DNA of 64,000 bases from Octopus sinensis (GCF_006345805.1 NC_043012.1:58652001-58716000), one strand, 5' to 3'; counted from the first letter of the stretch, positions 9,447 to 54,299 are shown. A program made the numbers and translations. The notes: generated by a model not told the origin, from the sequence alone.

Positions 9447-10055
9447 CAATAATCCCTCGCCATATCGCGGTTCACCTATCGCGGTTTATTATCGTGGTGT
9501 TGTTTTGCATTTATATTACAATAAATATATAGAAATTATAAAAATAATTAAAAAAATATAGAGTAATTTTTAAAAATGTACATAGGCGTAGAAGTAGCTG
9601 TGTGGTAAGTAGCGTGCTTACCAACCACATGGTTCCGGGTTCAGTTCCACTGCGTGGTACCTAGGACAAGTGTCTTCTACTATAGCCTCGGGCCGACCAA
9701 AGCCTTGTGAGTAGATTTGGTTGACGGAAACTGAAAGAAGCCCATCGTATATATATATACGTGTGTGTATATGTTTGTGTGTCTGTGTTTGTACCCCCAA
9801 CATCGCTTGACAACCTATGCTGGTGTGTTTACGACCACGTAAAATAGCGGTTCGGCAAAAGAGACTGATAGAATAAGTACTAGGCTTACAAAGAATAAGT
9901 CCTGGGTTCGATTTGCTCGACTAGAGACGGTGCTCCAGCATAGTCACAAATGACTGAAACAAAAAAAAAGAGTAAAGAGAGAGTACAGTACTGTTTCTAC
10001 TTCGCGGATTTTCTGTATTTTTTTACCGTAACACGCGATAGACGAGGGATTACTG
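9447..10055. mobile_element. Tigger/pogo-like MITE interrupted by a SINE
   Basis: TA|CAATAATCCCTCG...CGAGGGATTACTG|TA terminal inverted repeats with TA flanks. Confidence 0.75.
9584..9984 (+). mobile_element. Full-length CORE-like tRNA SINE with an internal (TA/TG) microsatellite
   Basis: GGCGTAG..GCTGTGTGGTAAG head, GGTTCCGGGTTCAG B box, ACCT.GG.CAAGTGTCTTCT (MIR/CORE-like), tail GGTGCTCCAGCAT...GACTGAAAC. At least 10 copies in the window. Confidence 0.9.
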
Positions 10056-14323: not shown

Positions 14324-14718
14324 ACTAGCAGTATCGCCCGGCGTTGCTCGGGTTTGTAAGGGAAATAACTATATAAACATTTTTAGAGATGAAAAGTATA
14401 ATAGCCATCTCAATATGGCTGACCACAAAGGGGGGGGTTGTTACTGTAGCTTTTTACGTTCTGATATTTAATAACTTTTTAGAGAGTTACTTCCCTTATA
14501 TATGCCAAAAATGCATTAAAAATGGGAAAAATTGATGGTAAATTATGTTTAAAATCGAAGACTCATCGTAGACGCGCGCTAATACCCAGAAGGGCTCGAT
14601 ATGAATCACGACTATAAGATACCCGGTTTTGGTTAAACTGCATCGCAAAATGTGGGAGTAGTTAGGAATCTAAATCGTAGGAGACAGACAGCACACAACC
14701 TCACTTTTATATATAAAG
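14324..14718 (+). mobile_element. Non-autonomous Helitron/Helentron-like element, copy 1
   Basis: Starts ACTAGCAGTATCGCCCGGCGTTGCTCGGG (terminal stem-loop); ends CAGACAGCACACAACCTCACTTTTATATATAAAG. Confidence 0.6.
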
Positions 14719-17152: not shown

Positions 17153-17334
17153 ATCCAGTACAAATATTAAGTATTATTTATATCAGTAAGCATTCTCTGA
17201 TGATACCATAATGCAACTGATATGTACTTTTTTGTTATATTAACGTGCGTAAGATGATGCATCTAAATATTATAAGAAAATGCATTGCTCTCATTTTGTT
17301 ATGCTTTCTGTTTTTAAATTACATATGTGTATTA

Positions 17335-17552
17335 AGGCGATGAGCTGGCAGAAACGTTAGCACGCTAACGGAATTTCTTCTGTCCATACGTTCTGAGTTC
17401 AAATTCCGCCGAGGTCGATTTTGCCTTTCATCCTTTCGCGGTCGATTAAATAAGTACCAGTTACGTACTAGGGTCGATGTAATCGACTTAATCCCTTTGT
17501 CTGTCCTTGTTTGCCCCCTCTATGTTTAGCTGCCTGTGGGCAATAAAGAAAT
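17335..17552 (+). mobile_element. MetaSINE-like SINE monomer with the Tx1-type tail (tail1)
   Basis: AAGGCGATGAGCTGGCAGAAACGTTAGCACG head; tail CCCTTTGTCTGTCCTTGTTTGCCCCCTCTATGTTTAG..GTGGGCAATAAAGAAATA. Confidence 0.9.
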
Positions 17553-17603
17553 ACATTACATATCTGTTTATGCATGTGTATATTGATACACACACACACA
17601 CAC

Positions 17604-18844: not shown

Positions 18845-19005
18845 TGGTTTCCTATTTTGGCAAAGGGCCGGCAAGTTCTGCAAAGTGGGTAAGTCTATCA
18901 GATCGATCTCGGTTTGCAAATGGTGGTAGTTATTCTAACGACCCCGAAAGGCAAAGTCGACTTCGGCGGAATTCGAACTCAGAAAGTAAAGACGGAAGGA
19001 ATACC
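18845..19005 (-). mobile_element. Distal body of the host SINE (tail2 type) into which the Tx1 element inserted
   Basis: Minus strand GGTATTCCTTCCGTCTTTACTTTCTGAGTTCGAATTCCGCCGAAGTCGACTTTGCC...GGCCCTTTGCCAAAATAGGAAACC. Confidence 0.8.
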
Positions 19006-20966
19006 GATTTCGTTATTGCCCACAGGGGGCCAAACACAGGACTGGACAAAACAACTGATTGGGATCAGTAATACGTTATGATTTTACATAAAATGTGAAT
19101 ATAAAAATTATATAAAATATAAAGAAATCGAATGAAATTATCAATACAGAGACAACACAATAGTAGCGATGATCAGGCCACGCTCCAACCCCACAAGCCC
19201 CGATCTATCGCTGGTAACTTTTTTTGTTCTTTTATAGCCTATTCACACGGCACCTTGTATGCACGACACCCGTGCAACATGCTTCCATCTCTTTTTGAAC
19301 ATACTCCCCGACAGATACCTCTTCTCCAACCACACCTCCCTTTTCAAATGAAAAGTAAAAAATGATCGTAAATCGTGGCCGGATGTAAAGTTGCCAGCCT
19401 TAATCCCTTTCATCCTAGTCTTCCATACTGCCTCTTTCGCTATTACTACAGCGGTGAGAAAACAATTCTTACCTTCTTTTGTTAAAACTTCCGGCGGGTT
19501 AATTTTTATAATTGACTCAGTCGACAGCCGTACACTTCCTTCGCCGGTAAACAGGTGTTCAGCATAAACCCACATTTCAGATAACTCCGGACACTAGACA
19601 ATAGCGTGAGGGACGGTTTCCCTGTCTCCCCCGCATCTTGGACAGGTCGGAGACTGACGCTTACTATGTCTTGCGAGCTTATCCCAAACGGGCAAGGCAC
19701 CTCTGTAATTGCCAGGTCAAGGTCCTTTGGAAGTTCTCCAACGTTCTTAACCCGAATGTACGATGGAACAGGCTGTCTAGTTGAATATACCAGAAACCTA
19801 CAGTCACCCCCAGGTCATCGTCACATTCAGACTTTACCAACCCACTATATAAAATTCGTGTAGAATCCCCACCGCTGGCGCTGCCCGAGTGCCGGAATAG
19901 CTGGAGGGCCTTACGGTACTCATTATGCCATTCACTCGACCTCTATCTACGAAAACACCAGGCTTCTTGTTCGCAAATACTTTTCAACTCGGAGAACAGT
20001 TGTCTGGCCAGCAGAGACCATTTCCATTCACTATCCACGTCTTCTGCTTCCTTCCTTACAATTTTTGGCTTGTCTCTTTTCGCATTTGTTTTCGGTCTTA
20101 GTTCGACCTGTTTTTGTTGATTTGAGCTTTCCATTTTCTCTTGTTATTAGTTGCTTTCTTTCTTCTGTTTCTCTCTCTCTCTCTCCTCCACTTCACCATC
20201 GGATTGTCCCTCGCCGTCTTTACAGTGTTTTTTACATGACCCAGCTGGCCACACTTGAAGCAACGGGGCTTACGCCCCTCGACAAATACGTTGAGGAATT
20301 CCTGCCCAATTTCTATTTTCTCCGGTATATGTTCTAAAATTGACTGTTCTGCTTGTATTAGGAGGTGAACCGTTTGACAGTCCAATTAGACTTTTCTGTG
20401 TTGTGATGGTAGCCTGAAGGAGTGTTATATTATCTTCCTTTTTTGCCAGGACATACGGTCGACTTGAGGTGGGACGCTTGGTATACGCATCTTTGACGTC
20501 CTCATTCCCATATATACTAGAATTAAGACAGCGTCCTCCGTTTCTAAAGATTTAACTGAGTGCATTTGTGCAGTTTCGATATCTTTTAGTCGTACTTCGA
20601 TAGTACTAAATTTCTTCCCTCTGGCTAGATTTGTTATATATTGCTTGATGGGTTTCAAGCACTTCTCAACTTTCACTTCGCTCACTCGATCATTTTTTCC
20701 CCTTTTAGACAGTAAGATTTTAAAATAATTATATTTCTTTTTTTCTAACATTAATAGTTCTTCCGGGGGTTGAACTTTCATAACACAGTCTTCAATTGTT
20801 ATCATATCTTTGTACTTTATCAGGTCATTTTTGTTTGTCGACATCTGGCGGGTTCCACCTACAGCCGCCGACGCAAAACTTCTTTTTTGTATATTTTCTT
20901 CTGTTTGAAGGATTTTCCCGTCAATATTCCTCTTTTGCAACAGTACACATTGATGGTTGGGGAAAT
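19006..20966 (-). mobile_element. Tx1-like (L1 clade) LINE, internally deleted: decayed ORF1 joined to the ORF2 C-terminus, 3'UTR and tail
   Basis: ORF1 segments RSFASAA...LETEDAVLILVYMGMRTSKMRIPSVPPQVD and CFKCGQLGH zinc knuckle (~20222-20263). The ORF2 C-terminus (~19243-19945) is homologous to 22550-23255. No EN or RT domain lies between them. Confidence 0.8.
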
Positions 20967-20984
20967 TCACTTATAGAAGAATCC

Positions 20985-23496
20985 CACGATTCGATCTTTG
21001 ACGAACCAACAAGGTGAGTTGATAAACGAACCCGAGGAGATGTGTGAGGCCTTTCAGGAGCACTTCGCTCAGCTTTTCGGTGAGTGCGGCGGGCTGGATA
21101 GGAGGAGGGCCTTTACGGACCTACTCGACGGTCTGCCGCGCTTATCGGGGCGAGATGCGGAGGGCTGTGAAGGGCCAATCACGCCTGGGGAGGTGGTTGA
21201 GGCAATGGCGGACTGCGGCGCGGGCAAGGCGCCGGGTTTGGATGGTCTACCCTATGAGTTATATAAGAGTATGCCAGACTTGTTCGGGCACCTACTGGCG
21301 GAGGTCTACGCGAACTGGCAGCAGAACGGGCTTATACCCAGATCTGTGCGCCGGGGAGTAGTGACTCTCGTCAGAAAGGACCCGAGCAAGGGGGAGTGCA
21401 TTGATAATTTCAGGCCCATCACTCTGCTAAACACAGAGTTGAAGATTTTGGCCAAAGTGTTATCGAAAAGATTGGCGCGTGTCGCGGATGGTCTGATCGG
21501 AGGGGCACAGACATGTGCCGTTCCGGGCAGATCCATTCAGGATAATCTCCATCTAATGCGGTACACTATAGAGGGGTTTAATAGTGATTCTGGCAAGGGT
21601 GGGGCTCTGGTCCATTTAGACCAATCTAAAGCTTTTGATAGGGTCGACCATCGTTACCTGGTATCTGCCCTGGCACAGTTCGGGCTGAGCCTTGGCTTCC
21701 TCAGGTGGATTATCCAAATTTACGATAACATCGACTCGGTAGTTCGGGTGAACGGCTTCTTGTCGAAGCCGTTCAAAATCAAACGCTCGGTTCGTCAAGG
21801 GTGTCCGCTCTCCCCGCTTTTGTACGTAAATGGCTCCTGAGCCATTACTGCGAAAACTGAGCGGCATCCCGAGACAGCCAGGTAACGGAAAATCAGTGTC
21901 AGCGTACGCGGATGACATCACCATCATCGTAACCGAAATGGACCACCTATGTAAAGTAGGCAAGGCCATAGAGGTTTACGAGACGGTGACAGGAGCAAAA
22001 GTTAATCGCGAAAAGTCAGTCGGCTTGCAACTCGGCACCTGGAGAGGCAAGTCGATGCCTCCTGACAGCGTCGTGGGACGTTGGACGGAGGGTCCGATTA
22101 AACTGCTAGGGGTCTGGTTCGGTCCAGACCTCCAAATAGAGAAGAATTGGGGCGAGGTAACGAGCAAGGTGGCTGCAGTAGCCAAGACCTGGTCTTGGCG
22201 GTGGCTATCCCTGAAAGGGAGGGCGGAGGTGGCTAATGTGTTCATCGCATCGGTTATCACCTACCGCCTTTCCGTCGGTCCTTGCCCTGATTCGTGGTTG
22301 ATCAAGTTGGAAAGACAGCTCTTCTACTTCTTGTGGAAGGGCGGGAAACCACTTGTGAAACGCTCTACTTGCTGTCAACAACCGTTAAAGGGTGGGCTAG
22401 GGATGCCTTGGCTGATGATGCGCAGACATGCGCTGAGGTTAAGACATCTGTGGCTCTACCTGGATGGTGAACGGGTGTGGTCTTCGCTAGCAAAACTGAT
22501 GTTTCCCAAGTTCACTAGTTTCGGTGGATGGGAAACCTGGCTGAATCGTAGATCGAAACTTGGTACTTGGTACACGGAGTGTCGCAAGGCTCTCCTGCTA
22601 TTCCGTCGCTCGGGCAACGCCTGCGGTGGGGGTTCCACCACACTCTTCTATAGAGGGTTGGTAGAGGCGGAATGTGAAGATACCTTGGGGGAAACCCTAG
22701 GTCTCGACGATAATCAGCTGGCCAGTCTGTTCCGACGTATGTTCGAGCCGAGGACACTGGACAACTTCCAGAAGTCTTTGGCATGGCAATGCTACAGAGG
22801 AGCTCTACCTGTTCGGGATAAACTCGCAAGGCACGGTGGCCAAGACAGTCCGATATGTCCAAGATGCGGACGGGATAGGGAACCGTCCCGCACGCTATTG
22901 TTCATTGTCCGGACGTGTCTGAGGTGTGGGTTTATGCCGAACAGCTGTTGTCAGGTACACGAAGAGTACAGCTGTCGACTGAGTCGATTACAAAAATTGA
23001 CCCACCGGATTTCCTCGTGAATGAAGGTAAGTTTCGTTTTCTCGTTGTAGTAGCAATTGCGAAGAAGTGATATGGAAGACGAGAATGAAAGGTTTACAGT
23101 CAGGCAAGTTCATCTCCGGCCCTGGTTTGATGAATTACTTCATCTTTCACCTGAAAAGGAAGATAGGGCTGGAGAGAATACGCCTGACTAGGAGAGTGTA
23201 TGAAGAACGATGGAAGGATGTAGCACGAAAGTTGCGAATGAAAGTCACAACATAAATGTAATACCAAGTGCAACCAAAAGTATCAGTGGGGAGGCGGGGC
23301 TCGTGGGGTCCGAGCTGAACCGCACCCACTCCATCTGTAATGTCTTCCGGTCTATTCCATCATCCGATTTTGTGTGTATTTTTGTAATTTCATGATATTT
23401 TTAAAACCGTTTTTGTGTAAAAACCATTCGTATGTCTGACCCCAAATCAGATTGTTTTGTCCCCTCTATGTTCGCCCCTTGTGGGTAATAATAAAA
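20985..23496 (+). mobile_element. 5'-truncated Tx1-like LINE with RT domain and 18-bp TSD
   Basis: PGLDGLPYE, FRPITLLNTELKILAKVL, LDQSKAFDRVDH, VRQGCPLSP, YADD and C-terminal CPRC motifs. TSD TCACTTATAGAAGAATCC at 20967-20984 and 23497-23514. Confidence 0.92.
20998..23255 (+). pseudogene. Frameshifted LINE ORF2 (reverse transcriptase), ORF-track pieces 20998-21840, 21830-23020 and 23067-23255
   Basis: A frameshift near 21830 splits LSPLLYV from ...PLLRKL...YADD; further disruptions occur near 22880-23060. Confidence 0.9.
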
Positions 23497-23514
23497 TCAC
23501 TTATAGAAGAATCC

Positions 23515-23776
23515 GAAATATCGCCAAATATGAAACTTTCAATCTTTTTTGCCTCCCTGTCGGTTGACGACTTTTCGCCAGACGAAGTTACACTTTTCAG
23601 CATCTTGCCAGCAATTAATGTGTCCCCCACAGGGGAAAACACAACACGATAGTTTTGGAACTAAGACTATCACACAAATAATTATAACAGGAAATAACAC
23701 AAAAACAGTCAATACAAACTTGCACTTACTATACAGACTCACACCAATAATAATTACCAATAAATCCAAACTCATA
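23515..23776 (-). mobile_element. 5' end (UTR and ORF1 start) of the minus-strand Tx1 element, displaced by the plus-strand insertion
   Basis: Removing the insertion and one TSD gives a stop-free frame from ATG 23603: MLKSVTSSGEKSSTDREAKKIESFIFGDISDSSISE|FPQPSMCTVAKEEY. Confidence 0.7.
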
Positions 23777-23789
23777 CAGAAGAAATACC

Positions 23790-24192
23790 TATTTCTTTAC
23801 TACCCACAAGGGTTTAAACACAGAGAGGACAGACAAACGGATTAAGTCGATTATAACGACTCCGGTGCGTAACTGGTACTTATTTCATCGACCCCTAAAG
23901 GATGAAAGGCAAAGTCGACCTCGGCGGAATTTGAACTCAGAACGTAAAAGCAGACGAAATACCTATTTCTTTACTACCCACACGGGGCTAAACACAGAGA
24001 GGACAAACAAGGACAGGCAAACGGATTAAGCCGATTATATCGACCCTAGTGCGTAACTGGTACTTAATTTATCGACCATGAAAGGATGAAAGGCAAAGTC
24101 GACCTCGGCGGAATTTGAACTCAGTACGCAGCAGCAGACGAAATACCGATAAGCCTTTTGCCCAGCGTGCTGTCAGTCCTGCCAGCTTTCGC
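23790..24192 (-). mobile_element. Tandem SINE: head-body-tail1 | body-tail1
   Basis: GAAATA|GGTATTTC junctions at 23964|23963 and 23790|23789. Confidence 0.9.
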
Positions 24193-26102
24193 TTTAGCTG
24201 GCAATGCATCAATTAATAATTATAATTTTAACATTAGTGGAGTGATAAAATTTATGATGCAGGTATATAATCGTTCAATTATCTCAGAATATTTGACTGG
24301 GATCTATAATATTGATCAGAAAAAGGGAAATTCAAATTCGACCAGTATTTGAAAGTAGAAAACAAACTTATAATGAAATACCTCAAGGCTTTTTTGTTCA
24401 GTATTGTACCTTATTCTATCATATATGCCTTAATTAGTTAATTGATTAATTAACTATACGGTGCTAAATTAAATAATTAATTATCGACCAATGGATTTGC
24501 AGTCTTCTTGCAGTCAATAGGAACGCATGCGTTTTATAGGACATTACTGGAATAGGAAAGAGGACCTCATTAGTGATACAAGCCTGTGGCAAATCAAACA
24601 TGGATATACACGGGTTGGCCTTATAGCTAGAAAACCCTTCATCGATCTGCTTTCTACGTACACATGCTGTTTCCCTTGTTGACCTTATTAATGCGAATAC
24701 GAACGAGACTAATGGATGTGTTGATCAAAGCCGGTAATCTTAGCCATTTTGACCATATGCTGGATTGACAAAGTTGTTTGTGCGTTGAATAATACGCCAT
24801 CCGGTAATTTTTCTGGCTCTTTGCTTTCTGAGTTCAAATCCAACTAAGATCAACTATGCTTTATATCATTCTAGGTTCGATAAGACAAAAAATCAGTAAG
24901 AAATTAGTGTTGGTTCAATCGACTTACATCTTTGCTCTTACTATGTGCCAAGATCCAACATTGCTTCTCATCCCTCCATGCTCAATACAAGAAGAACCAG
25001 TTAACAACTGATGTCGACTCATTCGACAAACTCCGCTCTTTATAAATATGTGATCTTATGACTATGTGAAAAATGATGAATTAATTAAATATCAGTAAAC
25101 GTAATTCTCGAAAACAAAATATTTCTAACAAAGATAGAAGGTCACACATCTTGCGGCAGAGAAAAGCGGATTTCATCAACCCTAGCATTTGACTGTCAGT
25201 GTATTTTATCAACACTCAGATTGAGGAAAATAAATAATGTCAACTTTAGCGAGATTAGAACATAAAAAAAGCCGTGAGCAAATAATTGTATTTTGACTAA
25301 CGATTTACAGATCCAACCAGCCACTTTTAATAATTAAAGTATTATGAGCGCGAGCTAACAGTAGAAGAGTCTCTAAGTCGGTTGTTTGCAAATAGTGCGC
25401 CGGAAGGGGTATTTAGGTAAGTCGTGGATTTGCGAAAAAAATTAAAACATTAAACTTAAGAAAATCCTCACTAATAATTGAACATCTTGAAAAAACATGT
25501 TATTCATAATTTTGTGAGACGCAAGTATGATTAATCAGACACAGTATGCAAGAGTTTTCTAAATTCTATCTTTCAAATATAGTTTTATTAATTCTTCTTT
25601 TTTTTACGCGAACTTCACTAATATTTTTTTCTTTATGTTATTTAATCACTAAAGAATGAGGCAAACAGGCAAAATCTTTAGAACGTCGGAATAAAGGCTT
25701 TGAGGTATTTCATACGAATTTTTATATTCTGAGTTCAAAATCCACCGAGATCCCCTCTGCCTTTCATCTCTCTGGAGCCGATAAAAGAAAGTGCTAGCCA
25801 CGAAACGTGTTCGATCGTATCCATCATTCCCTTCCTTCAAATTTTCCGCCCGTTTCTCTAAAATCAGAAATTTTTATTGTTCAATGCCCAGTGTACCGCG
25901 AAATCAATTGAGAAATCTCAACGGGTTTACTTGCTCTGCTAATAAAAGAGACCAAGTTTCTCACACAATTCTCAGTTAAGAAAGTATTCAAACACAGGAC
26001 AAGACGAGTGAAATGTTACTGTGGATAAAGTAATTTGAACATCGATCACTATGATTTGGATCAATTTTGAGATGGGGTTATTCAACAACGACCAGCGACC
26101 GT

Positions 26103-49310: not shown

Positions 49311-50366
49311 GAAGCCCCCCACCTCTGCTCTGTTTCTTGATATCGTTTTATCTTGGAGTACTGAAGTGTGTAAATTTGAAGACATGTCATTTGACAGAAT
49401 GTTATTTTGACAAATATTCCAGTGATTTACCCCACCACCACCACCAAATAAATTAACTGATAATTAGCCAACGAGGATGGCCATATGAGTTTACTCGACC
49501 TGCAAGAATGAGCAGTCAAATCAGCCACAAATTGCACTTCACCGTTTTTAAAATGAAGCACGTTCTATATTGTTGTCTATGGTGCACTATGACTACTTAA
49601 TAATGTAAGCGGGGGTCATGACTGGAATACCTTTGATCTCAGGTTTGTTCTCTGCCGGTGCAGACTTTGTTTGAGATAAATAACAACAACAAAAACAACT
49701 GCACCAACAACAACAAAAACACAGCATCAACAGCAATAACTGATAACCTAAATGTATCGCCAATTCAAAGGCCTTAAGACAACATAGTATGCTTCACGAC
49801 TGATGCTTTTGTTGTTGCTGCTACTGTTGTTGTTGTTGTTAAGCAACAAGACGGGTAAGGTTATTAGGTGATGGTCTAGGGCTTAGGGACGGGAGACCCC
49901 AGACCTTAGAAAAAGAAACTTTGGTCGTCTTGTTCTAGTCGAGGGCTCTTCGTTGGCGACCGGCACCACTGGGAGGTGGCCCTTGAAGTCGCTGGAAATG
50001 GAGACCTCCAGGTCCAAATTCTTGAACGGCTGCTACTGCTGTTGAAGGTGGTAAGAACAGACAGAATATGGTGGTAGTGGTGGTGGTAAAGGTGGTGGTT
50101 GGAGGGTCGGTGCCTCGAATCATCCCTAATGTAGCAGATCTGTGCTTAAACATGTTCCATTCGTCACCATCCTGCCTTTTAAAACATCATTAACGGCTTC
50201 GTAGAACGTGTCCCCATTCATAAATGCCGTAAAGATGGGGTCTGAGGGACATCTGGGTGCTCTGCGTAGGAGAGTGGACAAAAATAAAAACATTACCTCA
50301 CTGCTTATTTATTTATCCCTCAACTGTCTCAAGAATTATCAACAAGCTAATGAATTTTGTCTTATT

Positions 50367-50795
50367 TAAGGCGGCGAGCTGGCAGAATTGTCAGCACGCC
50401 GGGTGAACTGCTTAGCGGTATTTCGTCTACCGCTACGTTCTGAGTTCAAATTCCGCCGGAGTCGGCTTTGCCTTTCATCCTTACGGGATCGATAAATCAA
50501 GTACCAGTTACGCACTGGGGTCGATGTAATCGACTTAATCCATTTGTCTGTCCTTGTTTGTCCCCTCTATGTTTAGTCCCTTGTGGGAAATAAAGAAATA
50601 AGGAACGTTAGCACGCCTGGCGAAATGCTTAGCAGTATTTCGTCTGCCTTTAAGTTCAAATTCCACCGAGGTTGATTTACCTGTCATCATTTCGGGATTG
50701 ATAAATTAAGTACCAGTTGCGTACTGAGGTCGATTTAATCAACTGGCCATTTCTCTAAGAATTTCGGGCCTTGAGCCTAGAGCAGAAAAGTATTT
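50367..50795 (+). mobile_element. SINE dimer: head-body-tail1 followed by a partial head-body-tail2
   Basis: Junction AATAAAGAAATAAG|GAACGTTAGCACG at ~50600; ends GGGCCTTGAGCCTAGAGCAGAAAAG. Confidence 0.85.
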
Positions 50796-51589
50796 TGTCT
50801 TATTTTGGGCACCGTTTCAAAAGATTAAACATTATTTGTTAAAGCACCGTGGGTTCAATATCTAAGCCAGTCGGTACGTTACGTTCTACTGGAAAGATAC
50901 ACTATTTCACGTTGCTCCATTGAAAATGTGTACCAATCTTCTTGCAGCCCTCTCTCTCACTCTCTCGCTCTCTCTCTTTCCCACTCTGTCTGTCTGTCTG
51001 TCTCTCTCTCACACACAAAAATTCGAAGTTAGTTATTGCAAGTATGAGATAGATGAGGCAGTCTCTATAGTGGTGTCTTTTAGGCAAAATTTATCTTGGA
51101 TTTAACTATTCAATGACATACTCTTATGATTTTTTCTTTCTTCTTCTGGATTTGTGAGTGTAATTTGGGGTAGATTTAGGTTCTATCTCTTTCAGATTAA
51201 ACAACCCAGCAGACTTTTGCTTAACCCGGGTATCATCCCTGATCCACCAGATTATAAATATTAACAACGTAGTGGTATTCAGCAACAGCCCCTAGGAACC
51301 TGGTTGTGGTATTAAATTGAACGATCGATTATTACGTCTAAAATACATGTCTGCGCACGTATTTATTATATTAGCGTTGAATGAATAACCAGTCTTTCCT
51401 AAGAAGGCTGTAAACGATACAAGAGTCTGGTTCCATGGTAATTTACTTATGATGTTCTTTATACTTCAGACAAAAGGAATAATTGATTGGTTCTCTAGAT
51501 CTTTGTAGTCCGTGAAAAAATGATTTTCATGGATTTTTTTTTTAAAGCGTTGGAAATAATATTGCTATTATTATAACATACAGGAAATC

Positions 51590-53779
51590 GGCAAGCTAGC
51601 AGAATCGTTAGCACGCCGAGCGGAATGCTTAGCAGTATTTCGGCTGCCGTTACGTTACGTTCTGAGTTCAAATTCCGCCGAGGTCGACTTTACCTTTCAT
51701 CATTTCGGGGTCGATAAATTAAGTACCGGTTACGCACTGGGGTCGATGTAATCGACTTAATACCTTTGCCTCTCCTTGTTTGTCCCCTCTATGTTTAGCT
51801 CCTTGTGGGCAATAAAGAAATACAAATCGTTAGCAGTATTTCGTCTCTCGTTACGTTCTGAGTTCAAATTCCGCCGAGGTCGACTGCCTTTCAAACTTTC
51901 GAGGCCGATTAAATAAGTACCAGTTACGCACTGGGGTCAATATAATTGACTCAATTCGTTTGTGTGTCCTTGTTTGTGCCCTCTGTGTTTAGCCGCTTGT
52001 GGGTAGTAAAGAAATAGGTATTTCGTCTGTCTTTACGTACCGAGTTCAAATTCCGCCGAGGTTGACTTTGCCTTTTATACTTTCGGATCGATTAAATAAG
52101 TACCTATTTCTTTATTACCCACTAGGGGCTAAACACAGAGGGAACAAACAAGGACAGACATAGGTATTAAGTCGATTACATCGACCCAAGTTCGTAACTG
52201 GTACTTAATTTATCGACCCCGAAAGGATGAAAGGCAAAGTCGACCTCGGCGGAATTTGAACTCACAACGTAACGCAGACGAAATACCGCTAAGCATTTCG
52301 CCCGGCGTGCTAACTCGATTAAATAAGTACCATTTACGCACTGGGGTCGATATAATCGACTTAATCCGCCGTTTGTCTGTCTTTGTTTGTCCTCTCTGTG
52401 TTTAGCCCCGTGTGTGTAGTAACGAAATAGGTATTTCGTCTATCTTTACGTACCGAGTTCAAATTCCGCCGAGGTCGACTTTCGGGGTCGATAAATTAAG
52501 TACCAGTTGCGTATTGGCGTCGATCTAATCGACTGGCCCCTTCCCCAAAATTCCGGGCCTTGTGCCTAGAGTAGAAAATAATCGGTAGCATGCTCCGCAG
52601 CATGTCTTTCGTCTTTACCATCTGAGGTTTTGGGGGTTTTTTTTATCGACTCCGAATGGGTAAAGAAAACATCGACCTCGGCGGTATTTGAATCAAGCAA
52701 TATCGCCAAGAATTTTGCCTGGGGAGGTAACGATTCTGCCGGATCACCGCCTTGCTGATAATAATAATCCTTTCTACAGTAGGCACAAAGCCTGAAATTT
52801 GGGGGAGTGGGGAAAGACGATTACTTCTACCCCAGTACTCAACTAGTACTCATTTTATCGACTCCGAAAGGATGAAAAGTAAAGTCGACCTAGGTGGACC
52901 TTGACCTCAGAATGCGCAGACAGACGAAATACTTATTTCATTAATACCCACAAGGGCTAAACAAGGACAGACAAACAGATTAAGTCGTTTACATCGACTC
53001 CAGTGCGTAACTGGTATTTAATTTATCGACCCCGAAAAGATGAAAGGCAAAGTCGACCTCGGCGGAATATGAACTCAGAACGTAACAGCAGACGAAATAC
53101 TGCTAAGCATTTTGCCCGGCATGCTAACGTTTCTGCCAGCTTGCCACCTACGCCTTGATAGTAGTAATCATTTTTTTCTGGGTACAAGGCTCGAAATTTG
53201 TAGGGAAGGTTAAAGTCGATTAGAACGATCCCAGTGCGCAACTGGTGCTTAATTTATCGACTCCGAATGGATGAAAGGCAAAGTCGACCTCGGCGGAATT
53301 TGAACTCGGTACATAAAAACAAACGAAATACCTATTTCTTTACTGCCCACAAGGAGACAAACAAGGACAACACACGGATTAAGTCGATTACATCGACCCC
53401 AGTGCGTGACTAGTACTTAATTTATCGACTCCGGAAAGATGAAAGGCAAAGTCGACCTCGGCGGAATTTGAACTCAAAACGTAACGGCAGACGAAATACG
53501 GCTACGCATTTCGCCCGGCGTGCTAACGATTGTGCCAGCTCGCCGCCTTCAAACAGATTTTTAATTCTTTTCTACTCTAGGCACAAGGCCTGAAACTTTT
53601 AGGAAGGGGGCCAGTCGATTATATCGACCCCAATGCGCAACTGGTACTTAATTTATCGACTCCGAAATGATGAAAGGCAAAGTCAGCCTCGGCGTAATTT
53701 GAACTCAGAACATAAAGATAGACGAAATACAGCTAAGCATTTCGTCTGGCGTGCTTCCGTTTCTGCCAGCTCGTCTCCT
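51590..53779. mobile_element. Array of about 11 MetaSINE-like SINE units in both orientations
   Basis: The GAGTTCAAATTCCGCCGAGGTCGAC core and its reverse complement recur; tail1|GGTATTTC junctions at 52016|7, 52429|30, ~52932 and ~53293. Confidence 0.92.
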
Positions 53780-54299
53780 ACATCTTGATAATAATATCGA
53801 TAGTAAAATTTTTTTGAATTTGATCATAATTCTACTCGACCAGGGATACCCTGAGTTTAACTCACAACTACGACAACAGGCATCATGTCTGAAATATGCA
53901 CTTTTATATGTTATGTTTGAGTTGAAACGAATTCGCAAATATTTAACTGAGTGACCCTCAAATATTACGAGAGGAAAATAAAACGAAGTTACAAATATTT
54001 GTCTTTTTCAACGCATTCATTCTATTTTACTTTATTTTCACTTTATTTTTCTGTTCAACAGATCAACTAAGTACGAATCAATGACAACCTCCCTTACAAA
54101 AAAATAAAGACATAAATGATTATTTGGTTAACCACAAAATATATAAAATAAAATTTGAATAAAAAAACTTGTATACTGTGATCCTTTTTTGCCTTTTTTT
54201 TTCTCGAGAATGAATTCGATTGATTAATTCTTGTATTGATCGTTCTTTGATGAATCCCCATTTCAATAAGCTGAGTTGATAACCAAAATAACTACTCTC

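What the first reader, a model, noticed from the sequence alone, without database searches (positions are those of the whole stretch)
18845..24192. Tx1-like LINE inserted at a specific site inside a SINE that shares its tail: candidate self-targeting LINE-SINE system
Seen: on the minus strand the locus reads SINE head - body - tail1 | GGTATTTC body - tail1 | GGTATTTCTTCTG [Tx1 element] tail | GGTATTCCTTCCG rest of SINE body - tail2. The 13-mers at 23777-23789 and 18993-19005 match 11/13 and share a CTTC variant absent from the SINE consensus (CGTC), as expected for a TSD. The LINE's 3' junction is the same tail|GGTATT junction seen for SINE-in-SINE units at 23963, 23789, 52016, 52429, ~52932 and ~53293. 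Known: Tx1-clade endonucleases are often sequence-specific (Tx1L in the Tx1D transposon, Keno in U2 snRNA genes, Dewa in tRNA arrays, Kibi/Koshi in microsatellites). Inference: a Tx1 lineage here targets a high-copy SINE and also mobilises a subfamily of that same SINE, so the SINE is both cargo and landing pad and seeds its own tandem arrays. I do not know of a described case, but cannot search.
Basis: partly seen in the sequence, partly recalled or inferred. Interest (0 to 1): 0.88.

Follow-up and report, generated by a model that had tools for sequence, protein, structure and literature searches.

The report
Octopus LINE that targets its partner SINE
A dead copy of an L1/Tx1-type jumping gene sits at one exact 13-base site inside an octopus SINE that carries the same 3' tail, and independent copies at that same site in two other octopus genomes suggest a LINE family that uses its own partner SINE as its landing pad.

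Summary
On the minus strand the locus reads SINE head-body-tail1, a headless body-tail1 unit, the 13-mer GGTATTTCTTCTG, a LINE-like element ending in a tail1-like 3' end, the 13-mer GGTATTCCTTCCG, then the rest of a SINE with a different tail.

The "LINE" is not intact. It is about 2.26 kb of 5'UTR, ORF1 and the last ~265 codons of ORF2. Endonuclease and RT are deleted. A second, 5'-truncated sister LINE is nested in it on the plus strand, with its own 16-17 bp duplication at an unrelated site.

The key new evidence came from searching with ORF1. Non-orthologous copies of the same LINE family lie at the same SINE site:
- O. vulgaris: 5' junction directly after GGTATTTCGTCTG.
- O. bimaculoides: tail followed by GGTATTTCGTCTG plus SINE body.

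Tail1 SINEs show the same junction in 10 of 13 cases, plus one clean insertion at GGTACTT in an antisense SINE. Sister LINE families with similar tails sit elsewhere.

My best reading is a site-specific L1/Tx1-type LINE whose target lies inside its partner SINE. Arrays would form by repeated insertion. The closest precedent is Tx1-Mar/SINEU in crocodilians. Tx1 membership, genome-wide specificity and mobilisation are untested.

The parts
23964..24195 (-). SINE unit U1: tRNA-like head, body and tail1 (...GTGGGTAGTAAAGAAATA)
23790..23963 (-). SINE unit U2: headless. It starts at GGTATTTCGTCTG (consensus position 50) directly after the tail of U1 and ends in tail1. Its 5' part is tail2-family-like and its 3' part tail1-family-like.
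23777..23789 (-). Left copy of the 13-bp target-site duplication, GGTATTTCTTCTG
23514..23776 (-). LINE 5' end: 5'UTR (23776-23604) and the first ~30 codons of ORF1 (ATG at 23603). Homologous to the 5' end of the O. vulgaris copy L128 9837-10090.
20984..23497 (+). Nested 5'-truncated LINE of a sister family. It has RT (PF00078) and zf-RVT (PF13966), a frameshift near 21830, and its own tail GCCCCTTGTGGGTAATAATAAAAT(C). It is not inserted at a GGTATT site.
20967..20983 (+). Left TSD of the nested LINE, (T)CACTTATAGAAGAATC
23497..23513 (+). Right TSD of the nested LINE, (T)CACTTATAGAAGAATC
20086..20983 (-). Rest of the decayed ORF1 of the minus-strand LINE. CCHC zinc knuckle at 20262-20227. 51% identical to O. 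vulgaris P0145.
19981..20085 (-). Interval that holds the internal deletion junction. ORF1 is joined to the last ~265 codons of ORF2; EN and RT are missing.
19243..20038 (-). ORF2 C-terminal region with a Cys/His zinc-binding motif. It has frameshifts and stops. 45-48% identical to cephalopod LINE C-termini.
19006..19242 (-). LINE 3'UTR and tail (...TTGTTTTGTCCAGTCCTGTGTTTGGCCCCCTGTGGGCAATAACGAAATC). 84% identical to the O. bimaculoides copy L129 14213-14398.
18993..19005 (-). Right copy of the 13-bp TSD, GGTATTCCTTCCG
18845..18992 (-). Remainder of the target SINE (body from consensus position 63 on), with a decayed tail2-type 3' end
52105..52314 (-). Tail1 SINE inserted in the antisense strand of another SINE at GGTACTT. 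It has a clean 17-bp TSD GGTACTTATTTAATCGA at 52088-52104 and 52315-52331.
51587..52585 (+). Second array: head-body-tail1, near-full unit with tail1, headless tail1 unit (interrupted by the antisense SINE), headless unit with tail2
52755..53150 (-). Composite F: head-body-tail1 | AGTATTTCGTCTG-body-tail2. Both 13-mers carry the same A variant, which indicates a 13-bp TSD of a SINE insertion.
53155..53550 (-). Composite G: head-body-tail1 | GGTATTTCGTTTG-body-tail2
17334..17553 (+). Stand-alone tail1 SINE at a non-GGTATT target. TSD ATTACATAT(G/C)TG at 17318-17329 and 17555-17566.

Best explanation
The window comes from an octopod genome. The locus began as one resident SINE with a tRNA-like head, a shared body and a 'tail2' 3' end. 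That SINE was hit repeatedly at one phosphodiester, between positions 49 and 50 of a 233-nt consensus built here (...GCTTAGC|GGTATTTCGTCTG...).

One hit was an L1/Tx1-type LINE with ORF1 (CCHC) and ORF2 (APE endonuclease, RT, zinc-binding C-terminus) and no poly(A). It left a 13-bp duplication. The copy here lacks EN and RT, has decayed, and later received a nested sister LINE.

Other hits were units of a SINE subfamily that carries the same ~50-nt 3' tail.

Proposed mechanism:
1. The family's endonuclease nicks the bottom strand at |GGTATTTC.
2. Reverse transcription is primed on RNAs that bear the tail.
3. The top strand is cut 13 nt downstream.
4. For a SINE cDNA, the 13 nt or more of identity with the upstream target end sets the 5' junction in register. 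The insert therefore looks like a 'headless' unit, and the resident head ends up on the incoming copy.
5. The duplicated 13-mer restores the target on both sides, so arrays can grow by further hits and also by unequal recombination.

Shown: the junctions, the TSDs, the shared tail, and independent LINE copies at the same site in three genomes.

Inferred: endonuclease specificity, which LINE mobilises the SINE, homology-guided 5' joining, and how arrays grow.
For: The window LINE:
- 13-bp TSD, 11/13 identical, with a shared CTTC variant.

Independent LINE copies, found through ORF1 alone:
- O. vulgaris L128: the LINE 5'UTR begins at 9837, directly after a SINE head fragment plus GGTATTTCGTCTG (9824-9836). 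That is within about 2 nt of the homologous 5' end in the window.
- O. bimaculoides L129: ORF1, then the EN N-terminus, an assembly gap, then the 3'UTR and tail, followed by GGTATTTCGTCTG (14399-14411), SINE body and tail2.
- The flanks beyond the SINEs do not match the window. The upstream contexts differ (tail1 unit versus head fragment).
- The LINE 3'UTR is 84% identical between window and L129, but the SINE remainder only 75%. These are therefore separate events.

SINE junctions:
- Window: 6 of 9 SINE tails abut (A/G)GTATTTC, and 1 abuts GGTACTT with a 17-bp TSD.
- L128: 4 of 4 abut GGTATTTC.
- Composite F has identical AGTATTTCGTCTG on both sides.
- L128 9484-9538 and 9668-9722 share private variants, which indicates duplication in place.

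Other support:
- Tail shared over about 50 nt.
- Family architecture: PF03372, PF00078 and PF13966 in relatives; best solved-structure match is human L1 ORF2p, E = 1e-72.
- Only 13 of the 40 GGTAYTT sites in the window read GGTATTTC. Under a bare 7-mer preference, three of three LINE copies at that form has a probability of about 0.03.
Against: - Only three LINE loci exist, and only the window copy shows both junctions. L128 lacks its 3' part (rearranged at ~11302). L129 has no identifiable 5' junction and holds a 2.9-kb gap.
- Sister LINEs with very similar tails are at other sites: the nested copy, O. sinensis L124, Logan L125/L131, and L003/L127 next to microsatellites. The SINE tail is slightly closer to these sisters.
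- One tail1 SINE is at an unrelated site. Two tail1 tails abut SINE positions ~11-12 instead of 50.
- Headless units in two arrays share the variant GTACCGAG. This suits amplified composites or a subfamily.
- Chimeric middle units suit unequal crossing-over.
- No empty orthologous site was available.
- No enzyme was tested.
Confidence: 0.65

Rival explanations
1. The endonuclease has only a weak short-motif preference (about GGTAYTT). SINEs are hit because they hold most copies of that motif. Most tail1|GGTATTTC junctions were inherited from a few dimeric or composite SINE masters and enlarged by unequal crossing-over.
For: - 25 of the 40 GGTAYTT sites in the window lie in SINEs.
- One insertion uses the antisense GGTACTT site.
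- Headless units of arrays D and G share GTACCGAG, and middle units are tail2/tail1 chimeras.
- O. vulgaris is reported as 11.6% SINE (PMC13282606).
- SINE multimers and dimeric SINEs are known elsewhere (PMC10702118).
Against: - Three of three LINE copies are at the sense GGTATTTCGTCTG site with the same 13-bp register, none at the 14 antisense sites or the ~15 non-SINE sites. That gives p of about 0.03 under a bare 7-mer preference.
- Headless units differ between arrays (GTCTTTACG, GCCACTACG, GCCGCTACG, GTCTTCACG).
- Private variants shared by neighbouring units indicate events in place.
Confidence: 0.17
2. One ancestral LINE-in-SINE insertion was copied together with its SINE flanks. This could happen by read-through and mobilisation through tail2, or by segmental duplication. 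The shared junctions would then be inherited, not re-created.
For: In both the window and L129 the LINE tail is followed by SINE body and tail2, and similarity stops at the end of tail2.
Against: - The window's two 13-mers share CTTC, while L128 and L129 have CGTC.
- The upstream contexts differ: a tail1 unit in the window, a head fragment from position 19 after a tail2 SINE in L128.
- The SINE remainder is less similar than the LINE 3'UTR (75% versus 84%) and carries no shared derived changes.
- A transcript starting from the LINE's own 5' end would not carry the upstream 13-mer.
Confidence: 0.08
3. The junctions arise by template switching. Reverse transcriptase copying a SINE RNA stops at position 50, in the hairpin loop of the head, and jumps to the 3' end of a tail1 RNA, as in U6-L1 chimeras.
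For: - The C1-C2 dimer (50368-50791) is flanked as a whole by ATTTTGTCTTATTT.
- Two junctions lie at SINE positions ~11-12.
- Position 50 is the border between the loop and the 3' arm of a predicted 13-bp hairpin.
Against: - It cannot explain the 13-mer at the LINE's 5' end in the window and in L128.
- It cannot explain the clean TSD of the antisense insertion.
- Every one of the headless units is preceded by tail1, never tail2. Composites ending in tail2 would also need a switch between the reverse transcriptases of two different LINE partners.
Confidence: 0.04
4. The site is chosen by tethering to the Pol III transcription complex on the tRNA-like SINE head, as in Dictyostelium TRE elements, and not by DNA sequence recognition by the endonuclease.
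For: By eye, the site lies between the A-box-like and B-box-like parts of the head.
Against: - The nick position and the 13-bp stagger are exact to the nucleotide.
- One insertion lies at GGTACTT in the antisense body, far from the head.
- Headless units, which have no A box, are hit again.
Confidence: 0.03

Closest known systems
Tx1-Mar LINEs and SINEU SINEs targeting the DNA transposon Mariner-N4_AMi in crocodilians (Kojima 2015, PMC4494074)
   Same: - An L1/Tx1-type LINE group and SINEs are found at the same position of one interspersed repeat family.
- There is a fixed TSD.
- Tandem SINE insertions 'sandwiching a TSD' are explained there by sequential insertion.
   Different: - There the target is an unrelated DNA transposon, and no LINE sharing the SINEU-1 tail was found.
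- Here the target lies inside the SINE superfamily itself, and the SINE shares ~50 nt of tail with the LINE.
- Insert and target are therefore homologous, and inserts appear as in-register headless units.
Tx1L in Tx1D (Xenopus), and Keno, Kibi and Koshi (Tx1-clade sequence-specific LINEs; cited in PMC4494074)
   Same: An APE-type endonuclease LINE of the L1 superclade inserts at a defined sequence in a repeated target.
   Different: - Those targets are a piggyBac-type transposon, U2 snRNA genes and microsatellites, not a partner SINE.
- Clade membership of the octopus element was not tested.
Stringent LINE-SINE pairs that share 3' tails (UnaL2/UnaSINE1, Kajikawa and Okada 2002; reviewed in PMC3747384)
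   Same: The SINE 3' end is homologous to the LINE 3' end over about 50 nt, without poly(A).
   Different: Those pairs insert without strong site specificity, and the SINE is not the target.
U6-L1 chimeric retrocopies and SINE multimers or dimeric SINEs (Buzdin 2002 as cited in PMC4494074; Dip/B1 multimers and Alu in PMC10702118)
   Same: Head-to-tail SINE or RNA composites are flanked by one TSD. The C1-C2 dimer in this window fits this pattern.
   Different: - Junction positions in those chimeras vary or lie in A-rich tails.
- Here the junction is one fixed internal nucleotide, and a LINE uses it too.

Membership tests
Tx1 group of L1-superclade non-LTR retrotransposons | ORF2 with an N-terminal APE-type endonuclease, RT and a C-terminal zinc-binding domain | tested here: met
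   - Relatives P0005-P0046 carry PF03372, PF00078 and PF13966.
- The nested copy has RVT_1 and zf-RVT.
- L129 has the EN N-terminus after ORF1.
- The best solved-structure match is human L1 ORF2p, E = 1e-72.
- The window's minus-strand copy itself lacks EN and RT.
Tx1 group of L1-superclade non-LTR retrotransposons | RT-domain phylogeny places the element inside the Tx1 clade (RTclass1/Repbase references) | not testable with these tools
   - No Tx1 reference sequences were available, and no hit carried a Tx1 name.
- Circumstantial only: among recently active LINEs in O. vulgaris, L1-Tx1 is the only L1-type class listed (PMC13282606).
Tx1 group of L1-superclade non-LTR retrotransposons | ORF1 with a CCHC zinc knuckle | tested here: met
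   - zf-CCHC match at window 20262-20227.
- Intact ORF1 of 371 aa with CFQCGHLSHIKKYC in O. vulgaris.
- This feature is not exclusive to Tx1.
Sequence-specific LINE with a co-targeted SINE (Tx1-Mar/SINEU type) | Independent LINE copies flanked by the same repeat family at the same position with a constant TSD | tested here: met
   - Window: both junctions, 13 bp.
- L128: 5' junction.
- L129: 3' junction.
- Flanks are not orthologous.
- Only three loci were seen. Kojima's criterion of more than 20% of copies genome-wide could not be computed.
Sequence-specific LINE with a co-targeted SINE (Tx1-Mar/SINEU type) | SINE copies preferentially at the same target position, with tandem insertions | tested here: met
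   - 10 of 13 tail1 SINE 3' ends (window plus L128) abut (A/G)GTATTTC.
- Arrays of 2-4 units occur.
- The events are not all independent.
Stringent LINE-SINE partnership through a shared 3' tail | SINE 3' end homologous to the LINE 3' end | tested here: met
   About 50 nt are shared. Identity to single decayed LINE copies of two Octopus families is 67-79%.
Stringent LINE-SINE partnership through a shared 3' tail | The LINE protein mobilises the SINE RNA | not testable with these tools
   This needs a retrotransposition assay.
tRNA-derived SINE (SINE2) | Head recognisable as tRNA-derived, with A and B boxes | tested here: inconclusive
   - A-box-like (TTAGCACGCCGGG) and B-box-like (GAGTTCAAATTCC) motifs are visible by eye.
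- ARAGORN finds no tRNA.
- Rfam finds no tRNA match at E <= 10.

The most novel reading that the evidence does not exclude
An L1/Tx1-type LINE family in Octopus is truly sequence-specific for a 13-bp site in the hairpin of the head of the octopus SINE superfamily. It also drives a SINE subfamily that carries its tail into that same site.

Each hit would re-create the target on both sides. Each hit would also hand the resident Pol III head to the incoming, even 5'-truncated, copy. The SINE would then be cargo, safe harbour and promoter donor at once, and would build its own arrays.
Probability: 0.5. Interest if true: 0.75.

Novelty: new variant of a known kind. Interest (0 to 1): 0.65.

Why it matters
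Site-specific LINEs are known for rRNA and snRNA genes, microsatellites, telomeres and a few DNA transposons. I found no description of a LINE whose target lies inside its own partner SINE in six full-text searches of the paper library.

If the reading holds, it would:
- give a mechanism for part of the very large SINE load and the SINE arrays of octopus genomes;
- show a way for a SINE to escape the cost of 5' truncation, because the landing pad supplies the promoter;
- show a LINE that limits harm to its host by landing in junk of its own making;
- add a compact, defined DNA target for study of how APE-type endonucleases and target-primed reverse transcription achieve precision.

Tried and rejected
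Searches that gave nothing useful:
- Exact-protein look-up of the window's 396-aa RT ORF: not on record. The window's own genome appears to be absent from the collection.
- Metagenome scan with the tail pattern TGTGGNNARTAAAGAAAT: 120 stretches, essentially all chance matches in unrelated contigs.
- SINE core pattern in genome contigs and viral contigs: 0 hits.
- P0146 (O. bimaculoides CCHC protein): not on record.
- ARAGORN and Rfam found no tRNA or other RNA family in the SINE.

Explanations considered and set aside:
- Orthology of the window with L129 or L128: no collinear flank similarity.
- Priming by pairing between the nicked bottom strand and the RNA 3' end: the tail end is the same sense as the bottom strand, not its complement.
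- Recent local tandem duplication of U1/U2: they are no more alike (84.5%) than random copies (85-88%).

Partial or negative side results:
- A target logo from the four clean-TSD insertions in the window was too small to be meaningful.
- Logan contigs L125, L126, L127, L130 and L131 belong to other LINE families or species. They gave only non-SINE junctions.

Full report
**What is in the window**

Read on the minus strand, the locus is as follows.
- A SINE with a tRNA-like head, body and 'tail1' (24195-23964).
- A second unit that lacks the head. It starts with GGTATTTCGTCTG directly after the first tail and also ends in tail1 (23963-23790).
- The 13-mer GGTATTTCTTCTG (23789-23777).
- An element running from 23776 to 19006 that ends in ...GGCCCCCTGTGGGCAATAACGAAATC.
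- The 13-mer GGTATTCCTTCCG (19005-18993), which continues in register into a SINE body.
- A different, decayed 'tail2' 3' end, down to about 18845.

The two 13-mers match at 11 of 13 positions. The tail motif occurs 11 times in the window against none expected. GGTATTTCGTCTGC-like sites occur 19 times against 3.7 expected. One is the variant AGTATTTC (52932/3), and one lies at 53332/3, not ~53293. No RNA family or tRNA is detected.

**The 'LINE' is a wreck**

Inside it, on the plus strand, lies a 5'-truncated LINE (20984-23497). It has RT and zf-RVT domains, a frameshift near 21830 and its own tail. It is flanked by a 16-17 bp duplication, (T)CACTTATAGAAGAATC. Its target has nothing to do with GGTATT.

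With that insert removed, the minus-strand element is about 2.26 kb.
- A 173-nt 5'UTR.
- A decayed ORF1 with a CCHC knuckle (20262-20227).
- Directly after ORF1, the last ~265 codons of ORF2. The junction lies between 20085 and 19981.
- A 3'UTR and the tail.

Endonuclease and RT are missing. The two LINEs are about 72% identical over their 3' 650 bp, so they are sister families.

**Whose genome, and what kind of LINE**

The best protein matches are cephalopod: Argonauta hians, Octopus sinensis, O. vulgaris and O. bimaculoides. The window's own genome seems absent from the collection.

Full-length relatives carry an APE-type endonuclease, RT and zf-RVT. A relative matches human L1 ORF2p far better than R2 (E = 1e-72). 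The O. bimaculoides copy shows ORF1 followed by an endonuclease N-terminus. The O. vulgaris copy has an intact 371-aa ORF1 with CCHC.

This is an L1-superclade architecture without poly(A). Placement in the Tx1 clade could not be tested, because no references were available. L1-Tx1 is the only L1-type class listed among recently active LINEs in O. vulgaris (PMC13282606).

**Shared tail**

About 50 nt (TTGTTTGTCCCCTCTATGTTTAGCCCCTTGTGGGCAATAAAGAAAT) are shared between tail1 SINEs and both Octopus LINE families. Identity to single decayed copies is 67-79%. Weaker versions occur in Argonauta and other cephalopod LINEs.

**The decisive evidence: independent LINE copies at the same site**

I searched with the decayed ORF1 alone, which does not select for flanks. 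It returned one O. vulgaris and two O. bimaculoides proteins. Two of them could be located.

In O. vulgaris (L128):
- The LINE 5'UTR begins at 9837, immediately after CGTTAGCACGCCGGGAGAAATGCTTAGC + GGTATTTCGTCTG. This is a 5'-truncated SINE head plus the same 13-mer.
- The homologous 5'UTR landmark ATTTATTG lies 9 nt from the junction, against 11 nt in the window. Both copies therefore start at the same element position.
- The 3' part of this copy is lost to a rearrangement at ~11302.

In O. bimaculoides (L129):
- ORF1 and the endonuclease start are followed by an assembly gap.
- Then comes a 3'UTR 84% identical to the window's.
- The tail ...GGGCAATAAAGAAATT is followed by GGTATTTCGTCTG, SINE body and tail2.
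- Its 5' junction cannot be identified.

These are separate events for four reasons.
- There is no collinear similarity beyond the SINEs.
- The upstream contexts differ.
- The window's two 13-mers share CTTC, while the other two loci have CGTC.
- The SINE remainders are less alike (75%) than the LINE 3'UTRs (84%) and have no shared derived changes.

A random insertion would land on this nucleotide of a SINE with a probability of order 1 in 2000. This estimate assumes about 1.5 million SINEs in 2.8 Gb, from the 11.6% SINE content reported in PMC13282606. Three of three is not chance.

**SINE junctions**

In the window, 6 of 9 SINE tail1 ends abut (A/G)GTATTTC. One full TPRT-style insertion (52105-52314) sits at GGTACTTATTTAATCGA in the antisense strand of another SINE, with a 17-bp TSD. 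In L128, 4 of 4 SINE tails abut GGTATTTC.

Signs of events in place:
- Composite F has AGTATTTCGTCTG, with the same A variant, at both ends of the inserted unit.
- In L128, two neighbouring units share about 55 nt of private variants.

Every array ends in a headless unit. In the arrays in this window that last unit carries tail2; one L128 array ends in a different non-tail1 tail and one is truncated. The head-attached first units combine a tail2-like 'AG' at the site with a tail1-like body. This is what insertion of a tail1 cDNA into a resident SINE predicts, if the 5' junction is set by homology.

The same logic was used for SINEU-3: tandem copies sandwiching a TSD, through sequential insertion (PMC4494074).

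**Limits on specificity**

- Sister LINEs with near-identical tails are elsewhere:
  - the nested copy;
  - O. sinensis L124 (tail followed by TGGATGTTC);
  - Logan contigs L125 and L131;
  - L003 and L127, next to (ATT)n and (ATC)n;
  - Argonauta, where 5 of 5 tails are followed by TAT, one with the TSD TATTTCAAGGAA.
- One tail1 SINE in the window is at ATTACATAT.
- Two tails abut SINE positions ~11-12. One such dimer is flanked as a whole by a TSD, which fits template switching or a second minor site.
- GGTAYTT occurs 40 times in the window, 25 of them in SINEs. The 14 antisense SINE sites are used once and the non-SINE sites never. Recognition must therefore extend beyond the 7-mer, or inherited composites inflate the count.
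- Headless units of two arrays share GTACCGAG, and middle units are tail2/tail1 chimeras. Unequal crossing-over and amplification of composites probably contribute.

**Mechanism proposed**

Shown: junction positions, the 13-bp stagger, the tail shared by LINE and SINE, and recurrence in three genomes.

Inferred:
- An APE-type endonuclease recognises GGTATTTCG(TCTG). It nicks the bottom strand between positions 49 and 50, and the top strand 13 nt downstream.
- TPRT acts on tail-bearing RNAs.
- SINE cDNAs are resolved 5' in register through 13 nt or more of identity. The resident head and its promoter then become attached to the incoming copy.
- The target is regenerated on both sides, which lets arrays grow.

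The 13-mer is the 3' arm of a predicted 13-bp hairpin in the SINE head. Whether this matters is unknown.

**Comparison and novelty**

The closest described case is Tx1-Mar plus SINEU in Mariner-N4_AMi (PMC4494074). Others are Tx1L in Tx1D, and Keno, Kibi and Koshi. Those targets are unrelated repeats. Here the target lies inside the SINE superfamily that shares the LINE's tail.

Six full-text searches found no report of a LINE that targets its partner SINE. SINE multimers and dimeric SINEs are known but have other junction types (PMC10702118). I rate this a new variant of a known kind.

**Verdict**

- Confidence in site-specific insertion of this LINE family is 0.65.
- Interest is 0.65.
- A genome-wide flank census would settle the question.

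Noticed in passing
window 20984-23497 (+), TSDs 20967-20983 and 23497-23513: A sister-family LINE fragment (RT plus zf-RVT) is nested in codons ~31-36 of the other LINE's ORF1, in the opposite orientation. It carries the same kind of tail but sits at an unrelated target, (T)CACTTATAGAAGAATC.
   Followed up: yes
SINE consensus positions 33-66, e.g. window 24165-24131 (-): The 13-nt target GGTATTTCGTCTG is exactly the 3' arm of a predicted 13-bp hairpin in the SINE head RNA (5' arm CGGGCGAAAUGCU, loop UAGC). The last 6 nt of the tail (GAAAUA) are the complement of TATTTC inside the target.
   Followed up: partly
window 52590-53785 (-): Tail2-type SINEs and composites lie head to tail. Each head abuts the (ATT)n-like end of the previous tail2. 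This suggests that the tail2 partner LINE also lands next to its own tails.
   Followed up: no
window 50368-50791 (+), flanks 50354-50367 and 50792-50805: A tail1 SINE joined to a near-full tail2 SINE (junction at SINE position ~12) is flanked as one unit by ATTTTGTCTTATTT. This fits a dimeric retrocopy or template switching. A similar junction is at 51822/3.
   Followed up: partly
L128 9484-9538 and 9668-9722 (O. vulgaris): Two adjacent SINE units share about 55 nt of private variants (CTAATTTCAAATGCCCTCGGGG). The duplication made in place there is longer than 13 bp.
   Followed up: partly
L003 1996-2105; L127 2470-2510: Related cephalopod LINEs end in GAAATC directly followed by long (ATT)n or (ATC)n runs. 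This could be a microsatellite target or tail slippage in those families.
   Followed up: no
L001 8620-11310 (Argonauta hians): Five of five LINE and SINE tails (…GAAATC) are followed by TAT. One SINE has the TSD TATTTCAAGGAA (9609-9620 / 9859-9870). Two SINEs abut head to tail. The Argonauta lineage seems to have its own short target preference.
   Followed up: partly
protein P0122: A protein named 'MAG: zinc-binding domain-containing protein [Herbaspirillum sp.]' is 72% identical to the cephalopod LINE C-terminus. It is probably host DNA binned into a bacterial genome.
   Followed up: no
L129 11320-14212 (O. bimaculoides CM046601.1): An assembly gap of 2.9 kb replaces most of ORF2 of the only copy of this LINE family seen here that may still be full-length.
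   Followed up: no
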